This document shows positions 4,409 through 43,625 of a DNA stretch of 64,000 nucleotides, piece by piece. Within the stretch, counting starts at the first letter, position 1. Each line of letters begins with the position of its first letter. The stretch is from IMG/VR virus record IMGVR_UViG_3300020202_000061, positions 186,001 through 250,000 of that record; one strand, written 5' to 3'. Made by a program: the position numbers and the translations under genes. Under the pieces are notes generated by a model, which searched no databases, was not told where the DNA came from, and worked only from the letters and a program-made list of their open reading frames with translations.

Positions 4409-4840
4409 ATGGGAAGAGCCTGGAAACGACGCAAAGAGAACCATCGCAAGCCACCGAGGCCGATGAGTTGGGACTGTCCGCGAGGCAATTGTCGTTTCTG
4501 TGGCGGGGAGATCATCGAGGACGGAAAGAGAAACAACCGCAAGCATTGGCACCAAAAGTGTGCGGACTTCTGGGGGCTCCTGAACAACCCGGTGGACATG
4601 AAACGCTATGTGTTCGTCCGCGAGAAGGGCACCTGCCAGGGTTGCGGATGGTTCCGGCCACTCATGGGCGACTTCGATGCGGACCATCGTAGACCCCTAT
4701 TTGAGGCTTACGGAGACCTTCGGTACTGGGAACCAATCAACGTCGATCTCCTCTGCAAGGAATGCCATAAGAAGAAAACCAAGGAGGACATGATCCTCTG
4801 GAGGAAACTACAGGAAACCCCTCACACCCCCACTAAGTAG
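4409..4840 (+). CDS. HNH endonuclease with N-terminal Zn-binding motif
   Basis: CRFCG..HQKC; CQGCG...DADHRRPL...NVDLLCKECHKKKT. Confidence 0.85.
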   Translation: MGRAWKRRKENHRKPPRPMSWDCPRGNCRFCGGEIIEDGKRNNRKHWHQKCADFWGLLNNPVDMKRYVFVREKGTCQGCGWFRPLMGDFDADHRRPLFEAYGDLRYWEPINVDLLCKECHKKKTKEDMILWRKLQETPHTPTK

Positions 4841-4844
4841 GAGT

Positions 4845-4934
4845 GGAACTGTGTGTGAGTGGTTGAAACAACTCGCCTCCGACGCGAGCAGGCCCGCAAG
4901 GGCCTCGCGGGTTCGAATCCCGCCGGTTCCGCCA
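4845..4934 (+). tRNA. Ser-type (long variable arm, G73) tRNA with CCG anticodon
   Basis: GGAACTG/CGGTTCC-G-CCA, variable arm GGCCC-GCAA-GGGCC, loop CT-CCG-AC. Confidence 0.8.
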
Positions 4935-4982
4935 ACTTGAAACTCTTAACCCCCCGGATATATTGTTCCGGGGGGATTTTTT

Positions 4983-5213
4983 ATGACCGCATATACCTAC
5001 GAATTCAACGGCGCAATCACTCTGTTTGAGATCGACGGACACACCCACATCAACGTTCGCAATCGCGAACTCGGTGCGAGTGCGATCCTGGCGCTTCCAG
5101 ATTCAATGGAGGCTCCTCCCTATGACGACAAGCTCGGAACCATGTACGCCGGAGGCAGTGTCCGCATCACTGTGGAGATCAATCCCGAAACCGTGGTCCG
5201 CTTGAACAAGTAA
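4983..5213 (+). CDS. hypothetical protein
   Basis: compact ORF after the tRNA terminator. Confidence 0.6.
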   Translation: MTAYTYEFNGAITLFEIDGHTHINVRNRELGASAILALPDSMEAPPYDDKLGTMYAGGSVRITVEINPETVVRLNK

Positions 5214-7581: not shown

Positions 7582-7671
7582 GGAAGGTGGGCAGGCTGGT
7601 AATGCAGCGGTTTGCTAAACCGTACAGCCCCTTAAAAGGCTGACAGGGTTCGATTCCCTGACCTTCCGCCA
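7582..7671 (+). tRNA. tRNA-Ser(GCT)
   Basis: GGAAGGT/ACCTTCC-G-CCA, long variable arm, TT-GCT-AA. Confidence 0.93.
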
Positions 7672-14679: not shown

Positions 14680-15429
14680 ATGCAAGGCATTTACAAGATC
14701 AACGGTCTGGTCCATTGGACCGAGCGTGAAATTCGTCTGCGTGAGAGATTCATCACGGAGTTCGAATACGATGTCCGTGCATTCCTGCTCGGGACGAATC
14801 CTGCCTGGAACATTTCCCGTGTAGAAGGTCCCCTATTGACCCCGTTGGGGTTGATTTCCGCCGCGTACACTCCGAGTGACGTGTTCGTGCAGGAAACCTT
14901 CGAGAATGAAACACCGCTGGTTCTGCGCCCGGAAACCACTCCTGCGACCTACGCCTGGATGTGCCATCTGATCGAGCAGCAGGAGGCTCGCTTTCCGATG
15001 TGCGTATGGCAGGCCGGTAAATCGTTTCGTCGTGAACAGGATCAGGTCTCCAAGAACATGCGCCTGAAAGAATTCTATCAGATGGAATTCCAGTGCGCGT
15101 TCACGGCCGATTCCGCCAATGACTACCACGGCGCGAGTCTTGAACCGGTTCGTCGCATGCTGGAGAGTGCAATCTGCTTACCCACTCGTCTGGTTGAATC
15201 CGACCGACTTCCCGCATATTCCCAGATCACCATGGATGTCGAAGTTGACAACGGTGACAAATGGATGGAGGTCTGCTCGATTTCTCGCCGTACGGATTTT
15301 CCTATGAAGGCACGATTTGCCAACAAAAAGGGAGAGGTCGTCGAAAAGGAACTGTTGATCTTGGAGATCGCCATTGGTTTGGATCGCTGTGTTTACAATA
15401 GGTTAATTCGTGAATCCAGAATCCAGTGA
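14680..15429 (+). CDS. stand-alone class II aaRS catalytic core (GlyRS/ProRS/ThrRS-like)
   Basis: LRPET, GKSFRRE (motif 2), EFYQMEFQ, IGLDR (motif 3); no anticodon-binding domain. Confidence 0.8.
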   Translation: MQGIYKINGLVHWTEREIRLRERFITEFEYDVRAFLLGTNPAWNISRVEGPLLTPLGLISAAYTPSDVFVQETFENETPLVLRPETTPATYAWMCHLIEQQEARFPMCVWQAGKSFRREQDQVSKNMRLKEFYQMEFQCAFTADSANDYHGASLEPVRRMLESAICLPTRLVESDRLPAYSQITMDVEVDNGDKWMEVCSISRRTDFPMKARFANKKGEVVEKELLILEIAIGLDRCVYNRLIRESRIQ

Positions 15430-32698: not shown

Positions 32699-32776
32699 GG
32701 CGGTGTACTGCTTAGCGGCCTAAAGCGGGTGTCTCTAAAATACTGATCGCGGGTTCGAATCCCGCCACCGCCGCCA
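32699..32776 (+). tRNA. amber suppressor tRNA (CTA anticodon)
   Basis: GGCGGTG/CACCGCC-G-CCA; GGTGT-CT-CTA-AA-ATACT; own promoter at 32662. Confidence 0.82.
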
Positions 32777-43548: not shown

Positions 43549-43625
43549 GGTGGATATAGTGTACTGGTGTGCACGTCAGGCTGTGAACCTGAAAGGCGAG
43601 GGTTCGATTCCCCGTTTCCACCCCA
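43549..43625 (+). tRNA. tRNA-His(GTG) with G-1 and C73
   Basis: G-GTGGATA/TTTCCAC-C-CCA. Confidence 0.9.

What the first reader, a model, noticed from the sequence alone, without database searches (positions are those of the whole stretch)
4845..4934. Serine-body tRNA carrying an arginine (CCG) anticodon
Seen: G1:C72, G2:C71, A3:U70, G73 and a long variable arm, as in tRNA-Ser(GCT) at 7582, but the 7-nt loop reads CT-CCG-AC. Knowledge: bacterial SerRS recognises the variable arm and acceptor, not the anticodon. Inference: it could be serylated and insert Ser at CGG codons (missense decoding). Alternatively it is a drifted tRNA-Ser(CGA) or a decoy.
Basis: partly seen in the sequence, partly recalled or inferred. 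Interest (0 to 1): 0.75.

Follow-up and report, generated by a model that had tools for sequence, protein, structure and literature searches.

The report
Serine-bodied phage tRNA with arginine anticodon
A giant soil phage and its relatives carry a well-conserved transfer RNA that looks in every respect like a serine tRNA but bears the anticodon for the arginine codon CGG, so it probably inserts serine where the genes say arginine: a rare natural case of mistranslation machinery carried by a virus.

Summary
Window 4845-4934 (+) is a 90-nt class II tRNA with G1:C72, G2:C71, A3:U70, G73, encoded CCA and the loop CU-CCG-AC.

It is not an assembly error or a drifting pseudogene:
- Two independent assemblies are identical.
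- Syntenic orthologues in three diverged relatives of this 347-kb soil jumbo phage all keep CCG.
- 12 of 26 stem pairs change by compensatory substitution.

With the anticodon masked, its architecture and profile scores are those of tRNA-Ser (41-48 bits against 12-17 for Arg). It lacks A20, the main bacterial ArgRS determinant. GGAA...G73 stays invariant, as in the phage's own tRNA-Ser.

The phage and one relative also encode a canonical tRNA-Arg(CCG). CGG behaves as an ordinary Arg codon (about 15-19% of Arg codons), so the code is not reassigned.

Two unrelated low-GC phage fragments carry Ser-type tRNAs with CCG, and two further IMG/VR contigs (identical copies) carry one with ACG. Among 185,579 species genomes the pattern found one, in an alphaproteobacterial MAG beside a phage gene.

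Best reading (about 0.55): host SerRS charges it and it reads CGG as Ser, a phage-borne missense tRNA that works like allo-tRNAs. Charging, expression and biological purpose are untested.

The parts
4845..4934 (+). Class II (long variable arm) tRNA gene, Ser-type body, anticodon CCG, CCA encoded
   Evidence: ARAGORN; Rfam RF00005 51.8 bits; conserved with covariation in orthologues
4845..4851 (+). Acceptor stem 5' strand GGAACUG. G1 G2 A3 A4 are invariant in all four phage lineages
   Evidence: Sequence; alignments A3 and A6; acceptor comparison with control tRNAs
4854..4870 (+). D arm: 3-bp stem UGU/ACA and 11-nt loop GAGUGGUUGAA (Ser-type; positions 20/20a/20b = U,U,G, no A20)
   Evidence: Sequence; ARAGORN bracket string identical to genuine tRNA-Ser(UGA) and (CGA) of an alphaproteobacterial MAG. 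All three D-stem pairs change compensatorily in relatives
4872..4888 (+). Anticodon stem-loop CUCGC-CUCCGAC-GCGAG; anticodon CCG at 4879-4881, U33 at 4878, A37 at 4882
   Evidence: Sequence. U33-CCG-A37 is the same in all orthologues (sequences; MAFFT shifts the L022 loop by one column in A6)
4889..4906 (+). Variable arm, 18 nt: C + 6-bp stem (AGGCCC/GGGCCU) + GCAA loop + C48
   Evidence: ARAGORN structure; compensatory changes GG..CC to CU..AG in L017/L018
4907..4923 (+). T arm GCGGG-UUCGAAU-CCCGC (5-bp stem, so a canonical 7/5 acceptor branch)
   Evidence: Sequence; ARAGORN
4924..4934 (+). Acceptor 3' strand CGGUUCC, discriminator G73 (4931), encoded CCA (4932-4934)
   Evidence: Sequence; invariant in orthologues
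4409..4840 (+). HNH homing endonuclease ORF ending 4 nt before the tRNA. Relatives have HNH and/or LAGLIDADG genes at the same spot
   Evidence: Pfam PF01844 and phrog_11604; gene tables of L017, L018, L022, L068
4950..4985 (+). Intrinsic-terminator-like hairpin (9 pairs, 8 G-C) plus T run, 16 nt after the tRNA; conserved in relatives
   Evidence: Terminator scan; alignment A2
7582..7671 (+). Genuine phage tRNA-Ser(GCU), syntenic neighbour of the CCG tRNA in all lineages (likely source or paralogue)
   Evidence: ARAGORN; alignment A4

Best explanation
This is a functional, selectively maintained tRNA gene of a soil jumbo-phage lineage, whose host is probably an alphaproteobacterium (inferred). 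It combines the complete bacterial tRNA-Ser recognition set with the arginine anticodon CCG. The Ser set comprises the Ser-geometry long variable arm, the 3-bp D stem with a Ser-type D loop, G1:C72, G2:C71, A3:U70 and G73. Proposed mechanism: (1) the gene is transcribed with the upstream homing-endonuclease gene up to the terminator and processed to a CCA-ending tRNA (inferred from layout); (2) the host seryl-tRNA synthetase, which does not read the anticodon, charges it with serine (inferred from identity elements); (3) Ser-tRNA(CCG) competes with canonical Arg-tRNA(CCG) at CGG codons and inserts Ser for Arg at some frequency. It would thus be a phage-delivered missense tRNA rather than a codon reassignment. 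Shown here: the gene, its fold, its conservation, its Ser-type identity signature, the absence of A20, co-retention with a canonical tRNA-Arg(CCG), the Arg meaning of CGG in phage genes, and recurrence of the combination in unrelated phages. Not shown: charging, decoding, expression and the benefit to the phage.
For: Real and under selection: orthologues at the syntenic site in L017, L018, L068 and L022/L024, all with CCG. 12 of 26 pairs carry double-sided compensatory changes, and 0 of 500 shuffles reach that. Identical sequence in independent assemblies. Ser identity: the ARAGORN architecture string is identical to genuine tRNA-Ser(UGA) and (CGA) of an alphaproteobacterial MAG and differs from Leu and Tyr. 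Anticodon-masked isotype HMMs give Ser 41.1/47.8/46.5/26.8 bits against Arg 12.3/13.0/17.0/6.6; with the variable arm deleted, Ser still wins at 42-49/34 against 13-23 (cross-validation 205 of 238 correct). This is the largest discordance among the phage's 55 tRNAs. After the model's own training sequences, the best hits of a covariance model of the chimera are genuine tRNA-Ser at 74-85 bits. Evolutionary signature: G1 G2 A3 A4 and G73 are invariant while pairs 5-7 change, as in the tRNA-Ser(GCU) orthologues. Control tRNAs conserve exactly their own identity pairs, and tRNA-Arg(CCU) varies at position 2. No A20 in any of the 7 distinct Ser-type CCG tRNA sequences found (four phage-lineage orthologues, L263, L264 and the G001 copy), whereas the canonical Arg tRNAs of the phage and of the MAG have it. 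A20 is the main determinant for bacterial ArgRS, and Ser identity is anticodon-independent (PMC9976931). No phage SerRS or ArgRS. Two CCG tRNAs are co-retained in two phages that share about 70-76% protein identity. Rarity elsewhere: the strict pattern gives 0 hits in IMG/VR and in 185,579 species genomes, against at least 120 for the same pattern with NGA anticodons. Recurrence in phages: L263 and L264 (CCG), L271/L272 (ACG). [quoted passage not shown]
Against: CGG is a normal, fairly common Arg codon in the phage: 14-19% of Arg codons, aligned to Arg in relatives 72% of the time and to Ser only 1.9%, no more than CGH codons. Efficient Ser insertion would therefore damage the phage's own proteins. 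C35, G36 and G73 are ArgRS determinants, so some arginylation cannot be excluded. C11:G24, a minor E. coli Ser element (own knowledge), is not conserved: G:C, A:U and C:G are all seen. This phage duplicates several other anticodons with divergent bodies (Glu, Gln, Asn, Ile), so a second CCG tRNA need not mean a second amino acid. Long-arm tRNAs with non-Ser/Leu/Tyr anticodons make up about 2% of phage tRNAs (17 of 808), and several (Thr, Cys, Asn) have acceptor/discriminator features matching their anticodon (my reading of the printed sequences). No expression or charging data exist, and the only 'RNA' run holding related sequence is probably DNA. The host is unknown.
Confidence: 0.55

Rival explanations
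1. It is a structurally unusual but faithful arginine tRNA. ArgRS charges it through C35, G36 and G73 despite the Ser-type body. The phage keeps it as a second CGG decoder whose foreign body escapes a host tRNA-Arg-directed nuclease or depletion system.
For: C35, G/U36 and A/G73 belong to the bacterial Arg identity set. The anticodon loop (U33-CCG-A37) matches that of the canonical phage and MAG tRNA-Arg(CCG). CGG means Arg in phage genes. The phage carries many duplicated anticodons with divergent bodies, as well as RNA ligase and tmRNA genes, which fits a tRNA arms race (PMC10264068). Long-arm Thr, Cys and Asn tRNAs in phages have acceptor/discriminator features that fit their cognate identity, by my reading of the printed sequences. 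ArgRS is a class I enzyme, so the variable arm should face solvent (own knowledge).
Against: A20, the main ArgRS determinant, is absent in all 7 distinct sequences from at least 4 independent lineages. Not one has acquired it. The full Ser set is retained under purifying selection. In contrast, the phage's long-arm Thr tRNAs replaced G2:C71 and G73 with Thr-type C2:G71 and U73. Nothing known would stop SerRS from charging it.
Confidence: 0.2
2. It does not decode. It is a tRNA-shaped decoy, sponge or regulator, for example bait for an anticodon nuclease that attacks tRNA-Arg(CCG), a competitor for a tRNA-binding defence protein, or a homing-endonuclease target kept for the mobile element's sake.
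For: It always sits directly after a homing endonuclease gene, HNH or LAGLIDADG. tRNA-targeting defences and phage tRNA counter-measures are established. Such a role would avoid the cost of mistranslating the phage's own CGG codons.
Against: Every feature needed for aminoacylation and ribosome use is conserved: 7/5 acceptor branch, G73-CCA, U33, A37, 7-nt loop, G18G19 and the T loop UUCGAAU. A decoy would not need the SerRS acceptor signature. Unrelated phages carry the same combination without the same neighbouring genes.
Confidence: 0.15
3. CGG has been reassigned from Arg to Ser in this phage, and this tRNA is the reassignment's cognate decoder.
For: A dedicated Ser-type tRNA(CCG) is what such a code change would require.
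Against: CGG aligns with Arg codons in relatives 72% of the time and with Ser 1.9% (CGH 1.5%, Fisher p 0.48). A canonical tRNA-Arg(CCG) is co-encoded. CGG exchanges with CGC, CGA, CGT, AGG and with Gln and Lys, as an Arg codon does.
Confidence: 0.03
4. It is a decaying tRNA-Ser(CGA) copy or a sequencing or assembly error.
For: The loop CUCCGAA of the relatives is two substitutions from the CUCGAAA loop of the phage's Ser(CGA). This suggests the origin, not present decay.
Against: Identical in independent assemblies and read-derived contigs. CCG is conserved across four lineages that differ at up to about 45% of positions, with compensatory changes in all five helices. A separate intact Ser(CGA) exists.
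Confidence: 0.02

Closest known systems
allo-tRNAs (Mukai et al. 2017, PMC5389517): bacterial and metagenomic tRNAs with Ser identity and non-Ser anticodons
   Same: Long variable arm plus G73 (or U73), hence predicted SerRS substrates. Anticodons for other amino acids, with Arg anticodons prominent (GCG; AGA/AGG readers). Shown to insert Ser at non-Ser codons and to be toxic in E. coli. Found in soil metagenomes, and (8/4) tRNA-Ser/His occur in alphaproteobacterial phage clusters.
   Different: allo-tRNAs are defined by an 8/4 or 9/3 acceptor branch and a tRNA-Sec-like D arm. This tRNA has the canonical 7/5 branch and an ordinary tRNA-Ser D arm. It is phage-borne, syntenically conserved, and co-encoded with a canonical tRNA-Arg of the same anticodon. 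CCG is not mentioned anywhere in the main text of the paper.
Canonical bacterial tRNA-Ser (class II)
   Same: Architecture string identical to alphaproteobacterial tRNA-Ser(UGA) and (CGA). GGA...G73, D loop GAGUGGUUGAA. Top isotype-profile and covariance-model similarity.
   Different: The anticodon is CCG (Arg), not a Ser anticodon. The 11:24 pair is not fixed as C:G.
Canonical bacterial tRNA-Arg(CCG)
   Same: Anticodon loop U33-CCG-A37 and G73.
   Different: No A20, a 3-bp rather than 4-bp D stem, an 18-nt variable arm instead of a 4-5-nt loop, and an Arg profile score of only 7-17 bits.
Candida (CTG-clade) tRNA-Ser(CAG), decoding Leu CUG as Ser (PMC2246281, abstract)
   Same: A Ser-identity tRNA with another amino acid's anticodon causes ambiguous or altered decoding of one sense codon.
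   Different: It is eukaryotic and chromosomal, and it led to genome-wide reassignment. Here CGG keeps its Arg meaning in the phage's genes.
Nematode nev-tRNAs (PMC4300185, abstract)
   Same: Class II-bodied tRNAs with Gly(CCC) or Ile(UAU) anticodons, charged according to the body and not the anticodon.
   Different: Leu identity, eukaryotic. In this phage the long-arm Ile(UAU) and Thr tRNAs are separate genes.
Phage tRNAs that evade tRNA-targeting defences (PMC10264068; PARIS and retron escape tRNAs)
   Same: Phage-encoded extra copies of a host tRNA specificity, with altered sequence.
   Different: Those keep their cognate identity and change loop nucleotides. This one has the whole body of another isotype.

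Membership tests
tRNA (Rfam RF00005) | Cloverleaf that matches the tRNA covariance model above the gathering score | tested here: met
   51.8 bits against a gathering score of 29; ARAGORN call; covariation in all five helices
Bacterial tRNA-Ser | Long variable arm with Ser geometry (1 unpaired nt, 6-bp stem, tetraloop, 1 nt before the T stem) | tested here: met
   Bracket string identical to genuine tRNA-Ser(UGA) and (CGA) of MAG G001; Leu and Tyr differ
Bacterial tRNA-Ser | G1:C72, G2:C71 and discriminator G73 | tested here: met
   Sequence; invariant in the four phage lineages; rule from PMC9976931
Bacterial tRNA-Ser | Overall body resembles tRNA-Ser once the anticodon is ignored (isotype-specific profile) | tested here: met
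   Ser 41.1 bits against the next best, Asp 19.8, and Arg 12.3; still Ser-first with the variable arm removed; CM hits to genuine tRNA-Ser at 74-85 bits
Bacterial tRNA-Ser | Anticodon for a Ser codon (NGA or GCU) | tested here: not met
   The anticodon is CCG in every orthologue
Bacterial tRNA-Ser | Charged with serine by SerRS | not testable with these tools
   Needs an aminoacylation assay. No phage SerRS is present, so the host enzyme would act
Bacterial tRNA-Arg | A20 in the D loop (main determinant for bacterial ArgRS) | tested here: not met
   Positions 20/20a/20b are U,U,G (window), U,U,U (L017, L068) and C (L022). Canonical Arg tRNAs of the phage and of G001 have A after G18G19 (rule)
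Bacterial tRNA-Arg | C35 and G/U36 in the anticodon; A/G73 | tested here: met
   C35, G36, G73
Bacterial tRNA-Arg | Class I body (short variable loop, 4-bp D stem) that resembles tRNA-Arg | tested here: not met
   18-nt variable arm and 3-bp D stem; Arg profile 6.6-17 bits against 27-56 for the phage's canonical Arg tRNAs
allo-tRNA (Mukai 2017) | 12-bp acceptor branch arranged 8/4 or 9/3, with a tRNA-Sec-like D arm | tested here: not met
   7-bp acceptor plus 5-bp T stem, and an ordinary Ser-type D arm; definition
allo-tRNA (Mukai 2017) | Ser identity elements (long variable arm, G73/U73) combined with a non-Ser anticodon | tested here: met
   definition

The most novel reading that the evidence does not exclude
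Codon-specific mistranslation is a deliberate and recurrently evolved phage strategy. Large phages deliver a Ser-charged tRNA that reads an Arg codon (CCG here and in two unrelated low-GC phages, ACG in two further contigs). This would corrupt, re-tune or rescue translation at that codon during infection. The phage's core replication enzymes are shielded because they contain no CGG at all, and a co-encoded canonical tRNA-Arg(CCG) sets the Ser:Arg ratio.
Probability: 0.2. Interest if true: 0.9.

Novelty: new variant of a known kind. Interest (0 to 1): 0.78.

Why it matters
Natural tRNAs whose charging identity contradicts their anticodon are very rare. Each known case has changed how the fidelity and evolvability of the genetic code are understood: Candida tRNA-Ser(CAG), nematode nev-tRNAs, allo-tRNAs, and Streptomyces tRNA-ProX (the last from my own knowledge).

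This case has four properties that make it worth following:
- It is a canonical-shaped Ser tRNA with an Arg anticodon.
- It is carried by viruses.
- It is kept under purifying selection next to a faithful tRNA of the same anticodon.
- It recurs in unrelated phages.

If it is serylated, phages can impose sense-codon ambiguity on an infected cell. That is a new kind of translational manipulation, and it bears on phage-host conflict over tRNAs and on recoded 'firewall' organisms that rely on tRNA identity. If it is arginylated instead, it would show that bacterial ArgRS accepts a class II body without A20, which would also be new. Either outcome can be tested directly with a 90-nt transcript and standard enzymes.

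Tried and rejected
- **Close relatives in cultured phages.** Megablast and blastn of the locus and of the tRNA against INPHARED found nothing close. There was only a 76% match to tRNA-Ser of Bacillus phage G and a short HNH match to Sinorhizobium phage Phosso.
- **Exact-pattern scans of IMG/VR.** The 5' half and the 3' half of the tRNA each gave 0 hits.
- **Relatives through DNA polymerase.** The search for related loci in IMG/VR gave 0 hits.
- **blastn against E. coli genomes.** It matched only the T arm of tRNA-Asp, which is uninformative.
- **Whole-record searches.** The genome search does not draw 'relatives' for a virus record, and the 409-kb JGI record behind L017 is not held.
- **Distant homologues of the upstream 675-aa protein.** The 42 loci other than the window's own copy (about 28-39% identity) carry no such tRNA nearby.
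- **Expression.** The single 'RNA' run (X3, wastewater) is flagged as probably DNA. It holds only a 167-nt contig of a relative that covers the 5' half of the tRNA, so there is no expression evidence.
- **Ser meaning of CGG.** CGG-to-Ser exchanges with relatives are not enriched (14/719 against 38/2564, p 0.48).
- **CGG over-dispersion among genes.** It is real (chi2/df 2.78, the highest of all codons), but GGG and GGC are nearly as high. Residual antisense ORFs could contribute. I treat it as suggestive only.
- **Stop-codon recoding.** There is no evidence for it despite a tRNA(CUA): all three stops are used and no stop stands out.
- **The two conserved 76-aa ORFs downstream.** They have no family hits.
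- **Not attempted.** Complex prediction was not run, because it gives no verdict for RNA partners.
Full report
**What is there**

ARAGORN finds 30 tRNA genes in the window. One is a 90-nt gene at 4845-4934 (+) with anticodon CCG. Rfam's tRNA model scores it 51.8 bits.

Read directly from the sequence, it has these parts:
- a 7-bp acceptor stem GGAACUG/CGGUUCC (G1:C72, G2:C71, A3:U70)
- U8 and G9
- a 3-bp D stem with the loop GAGUGGUUGAA
- the anticodon stem CUCGC/GCGAG with the 7-nt loop CU-CCG-AC
- an 18-nt variable arm (one free nucleotide, a 6-bp stem, a GCAA loop, one free nucleotide)
- a 5-bp T stem with UUCGAAU
- G73 and an encoded CCA

The gene starts 4 nt after the stop codon of an HNH homing-endonuclease ORF (4409-4840). 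A strong terminator-like hairpin with a T run follows it at 4950-4985.

**Where it comes from**

The window is positions 186001-250000 of a 347,504-bp IMG/VR virus record with 54.5% G+C. The record comes from a soil metagenome. A 401-kb ENA assembly of the same phage also exists.

The genome encodes 55 tRNAs and a permuted tmRNA. Its DNA polymerase is only about 33-34% identical to those of cultured jumbo phages; the best match is Sinorhizobium phage Phosso.

The same genome holds a canonical 78-nt tRNA-Arg(CCG) at 292892-292969, together with Arg tRNAs for ACG, GCG, UCG, UCU and CCU. It also holds four Ser tRNAs (GCU, GGA, CGA, UGA). There is no ArgRS. The only class II synthetase core is a 249-aa GlyRS-like protein, so host enzymes must charge these tRNAs.

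**It is not an error and not decaying**

- A Logan contig of run X1 covers the stretch with no differences at depth 16.8. Contigs of a second run also agree.
- The independent ENA assembly is identical.
- Homologues of the neighbouring 666-aa protein led to syntenic contigs of relatives.
- Each relative has a class II tRNA with anticodon CCG at the same place: after a large reverse-strand gene and a homing endonuclease, and before two 76-aa ORFs and tRNA-Ser(GCU). The copies are L017:7716-7805, L018:5853-5942, L068:9862-9951 and L022:5716-5801 (identical to L024:677-762).
- The four distinct sequences differ mostly by compensatory pairs. The D stem reads UGU/ACA, CGC/GCG, CAC/GUG or CCC/GGG. 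Anticodon-stem and variable-stem pairs are swapped, and acceptor pairs 5-7 change.
- RNAalifold recovers the class II cloverleaf, with 12 of 26 pairs showing double-sided changes.
- The counting tool gives 92% paired cells and 12 covarying pairs, against 3.5 +/- 1.4 in shuffles (0 of 500 reach it) and 1-3 when the partners are slid.
- U33-CCG-A37, G1 G2 A3 A4, G73 and CCA do not change.

**Which amino-acid identity does the body carry?**

Four lines of evidence agree on serine.

1. *Architecture.* The ARAGORN structure string is identical to that of the genuine tRNA-Ser(UGA) and tRNA-Ser(CGA) of an alphaproteobacterial MAG (G001). It differs from that MAG's Leu and Tyr tRNAs, which have shorter variable stems and more unpaired 3' nucleotides.

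2. *Isotype profiles.* I collected 808 tRNAs from 120 IMG/VR loci, masked their anticodons and built one profile per isotype. Two-thirds/one-third cross-validation classified 205 of 238 correctly, and no Ser, Leu or Tyr tRNA was assigned to another isotype.

| Sequence | Ser (bits) | Arg (bits) |
|---|---|---|
| window | 41.1 | 12.3 |
| L068 | 47.8 | 13.0 |
| L017 | 46.5 | 17.0 |
| L022 | 26.8 | 6.6 |

The phage's own three canonical Ser tRNAs score 37-42 bits for Ser. With the variable arm deleted from queries and models, Ser still wins, at 34-49 bits against 13-23 for Arg. This is the largest body/anticodon discordance among all 55 tRNAs of the phage.

3. *Covariance model.* After its own training sequences, a model built from the orthologues finds the MAG's genuine tRNA-Ser genes next, at 74-85 bits. 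That is above the phage's own Ser tRNAs, which score 54-59 bits.

4. *Which positions are frozen.* Among orthologous tRNAs of these phages, the invariant acceptor positions track the known identity sets. Gly keeps G1 C2 G3 and U73. Thr keeps G1 C2. Arg(CCU) varies at position 2. The CCG tRNA keeps G1 G2 A3 A4 and G73, as tRNA-Ser(GCU) keeps G1 G2 A3 and G73.

According to the identity review PMC9976931, bacterial Ser identity rests on the variable arm, on G1:C72 and G2:C71, and on G73. It is independent of the anticodon. Bacterial Arg identity rests mainly on A20, with C35, G/U36 and A/G73.

The CCG tRNA has C35, G36 and G73 but never A20. Positions 20-20b are UUG, UUU or C. The canonical Arg tRNAs of the phage and of G001 all have A20. 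SerRS should therefore accept it fully, and ArgRS should accept it at best poorly.

**What CGG means in this phage**

- CGG is not avoided overall. It makes up 14-19% of Arg codons in every gene-length class.
- In 157 true-frame alignments with relatives (25,860 aligned residues), CGG faces Arg 72% of the time. It then faces Gln, Gly, Lys and Trp.
- It faces Ser only 1.9% of the time, no more than CGU/CGC/CGA at 1.5% (Fisher p 0.48).

The code is therefore not reassigned. If the tRNA inserts Ser, that is true mistranslation.

The 409-kb relative also keeps both CCG tRNAs. L017 holds the Ser-type copy and L071 the canonical one in its Arg/Lys/Ile cluster.

One suggestive pattern emerged:
- CGG is the most unevenly used codon among genes (chi2/df 2.78).
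- Its usage is uncorrelated with GC3 or with other G-ending or rare codons.
- Core enzymes contain none: DNA polymerase 0 of 56 Arg codons, helicase 0 of 31, SbcC-like nuclease 0 of 43. Those that use minor Arg codons at all use CGA, AGA or AGG rather than CGG, and all three favour CCG and CUG.
- Other long genes use CGG for 30-40% of Arg codons.

This fits CGG being a risky codon during infection. Ordinary expression-linked bias or gene origin could also produce it, and GGG and GGC are almost as uneven. I do not lean on it.

**How unusual the combination is**

| Scan | Collection | Result |
|---|---|---|
| Strict Ser-type body (GGAA start) + CCG | IMG/VR | 0 hits outside this record |
| Strict Ser-type body + CCG | 185,579 species genomes | 0 hits |
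| Relaxed pattern + CCG | species genomes | 22 matches, 1 a real tRNA |
| Relaxed pattern + CCG | IMG/VR | 2 hits |

The one real genomic hit is a 90-nt paralogue of tRNA-Ser(GCU) with anticodon CCG and A73, in an alphaproteobacterial MAG (L077:692-781). It lies next to a Mu Gp27-like phage gene. That genome has a complete normal tRNA set, including a canonical Arg(CCG).

The two IMG/VR hits are unrelated low-GC phage fragments with Ser-type class II tRNA(CCG). They are L263:2299-2386 (40% GC) and L264:11465-11552 (38% GC, next to a permuted tmRNA). Both have a GGAG start and G73, and neither has A20. CGG is only 2-4% of Arg codons on those fragments.

A Ser-type tRNA with the Arg anticodon ACG occurs in L271/L272.

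So the combination is almost absent from cells but recurs in phages. This pattern is what one would expect of something harmful to a cell and useful to a virus.

**Comparison with known systems**

Functionally the closest are the allo-tRNAs of Mukai et al. (PMC5389517). These tRNAs have a long variable arm and G73/U73, with anticodons for 35 different codons; Arg GCG is among the commonest. They insert Ser at Leu codons and arrest growth in E. coli.

Membership fails, however. allo-tRNAs are defined by an 8/4 or 9/3 acceptor branch and a tRNA-Sec-like D arm, whereas this tRNA is a canonical 7/5 tRNA-Ser in all but its anticodon.

The same paper notes (8/4) tRNA-Ser and tRNA-His in tRNA clusters of alphaproteobacterial phages. 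This phage has an 8/4-looking Ser(GGA) and His.

Several observations make an alphaproteobacterial host likely, though this is an inference:
- the permuted tmRNA
- the similarity of the CCG tRNA to alphaproteobacterial tRNA-Ser
- the Sinorhizobium-phage affinities

Other analogues are Candida tRNA-Ser(CAG) and the nematode nev-tRNAs (abstracts). I found no paper in the held library that describes a Ser-type tRNA(CCG) or any identity-mismatched tRNA conserved in phages.

**Verdict**

The feature is real, conserved and recurrent. The most likely mechanism is serylation by host SerRS and competitive reading of CGG as Ser (0.55).

The rivals are:
- a faithful Arg-charged tRNA with a foreign body, perhaps to escape a tRNA-Arg-directed defence (0.20). 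Against it stand the universal absence of A20 and the retained Ser acceptor signature.
- a non-decoding decoy or regulator (0.15)
- reassignment of CGG to Ser (0.03)
- artefact or decay (0.02)

The purpose is unknown. Candidates include host shut-off by proteome corruption, rescue of ribosomes stalled at CGG when Arg-tRNA is attacked or depleted, and controlled protein heterogeneity. I rate it a new variant of a known kind (natural Ser-identity missense tRNAs), with high interest because the decisive experiments are simple.

Noticed in passing
window 14680-15429 (+): A 249-aa minimal class II synthetase core, most like the catalytic domain of GlyRS (NCBIfam PRK04173 6.8e-18, far below cut-off; Pfam tRNA-synt_2b). 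It has no anticodon-binding domain. It is wedged between tRNA-Arg(CCU) and the tRNA-Gly(GCC)/(UCC) pair and contains 0 CGG among 22 Arg codons. Relatives L017, L018 and L020 lack it at this position.
   Followed up: partly
window 32699-32776 (+): An amber-suppressor-type tRNA with anticodon CUA (ARAGORN labels it 'Pyl') and G73. The genome shows no sign of TAG recoding: 59 of 370 crude ORFs end in TAG.
   Followed up: partly
L013:1227-1312 and L013:5948-6033 (genome 271227-271312, 275948-276033): Two 86-nt long-variable-arm tRNAs with Thr anticodons CGU and UGU. They have a Ser-type D arm (GAGUGGUCGAA) but a Thr-type acceptor (G1:C72, C2:G71, C3:G70, U73). They look like Ser-scaffold tRNAs whose identity elements were switched. 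Similar long-arm Thr(UGU) genes occur in IMG/VR loci L123 and L212.
   Followed up: partly
L008:13337-13428 (genome 133337-133428): A 92-nt tRNA-Ile(UAU) with a long variable arm. Long-arm Ile(UAU) tRNAs recur in other viral contigs (L149, L191, L209).
   Followed up: no
L013:10599-10686 (genome 280599-280686) and window 43550-43625: tRNA-Ser(GGA) folds best with an 8-bp acceptor and a 4-bp T stem, with U73. tRNA-His also looks 8/4. This resembles the (8/4) tRNA-Ser/His pairs that Mukai et al. reported in alphaproteobacterial phage tRNA clusters.
   Followed up: partly
L008:8216-8552 (genome 128216-128552); L071:11080-11508: The phage encodes a permuted (two-piece type) tmRNA with tag ANDNFVADEGFRMAA. 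Relatives L071 and L072 also encode an RF-1-domain protein of 142-143 aa, which I read as ArfB-like, and L071 alone a peptide deformylase. This looks like investment in ribosome rescue.
   Followed up: no
L077:692-781 (-), Alphaproteobacteria MAG contig JAJDUK010000051.1: The only cellular hit: a 90-nt paralogue of that genome's tRNA-Ser(GCU) with anticodon CCG and discriminator A73. It lies beside a Mu Gp27-like phage gene near a contig end. It may be a prophage-borne or att-site-derived copy.
   Followed up: partly
L263:2299-2386; L264:11465-11552; L271:8080-8168 (-) and L272:3556-3644: Unrelated IMG/VR phage fragments carry Ser-type class II tRNAs with Arg anticodons. L263 and L264 have CCG (GC 0.40 and 0.38; on each fragment it is the only tRNA, and in L264 it lies next to a permuted tmRNA). 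L271 and L272 (identical copies) have ACG.
   Followed up: partly
window 4409-4840; L017:6891-7711; L022:4772-5707: Different homing endonucleases occupy the slot immediately upstream of the CCG tRNA: HNH in the window, L018 and L068; HNH plus LAGLIDADG in L017; LAGLIDADG in L022. The last ~35 nt before the tRNA stay conserved in the window, L017 and L018 whichever endonuclease ORF ends there, which suggests a shared homing site or processing leader.
   Followed up: no
genome-wide; e.g. L012:6807-9701 (DNA polymerase), L016:6953-8653 (helicase), L006:4988-6892 (SbcC-like): CGG is the most unevenly distributed codon among genes (chi2/df 2.78). Three core enzymes have 0 CGG in 130 Arg codons; where they use minor Arg codons these are CGA, AGA or AGG. 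Other long genes reach 35-40% CGG (for example genome 70662-73163 and 167699-169321).
   Followed up: partly
genome 64636-64709 (L005:4636-4709) and 178288-178364 (L010:18288-18364): Two tRNA-like genes with 6-nt anticodon loops, for which ARAGORN gives no anticodon. The phage also has second, strongly divergent copies of Glu(UUC), Glu(CUC), Gln(CUG), Asn(GUU) and Ile(GAU) tRNAs next to canonical ones.
   Followed up: no
L032 (genome 340651-347504): The phage carries a second, diverged copy (39% identity over residues 47-342) of the 675-aa protein encoded on the reverse strand just upstream of the CCG tRNA locus. Neither copy has a family assignment.
   Followed up: no
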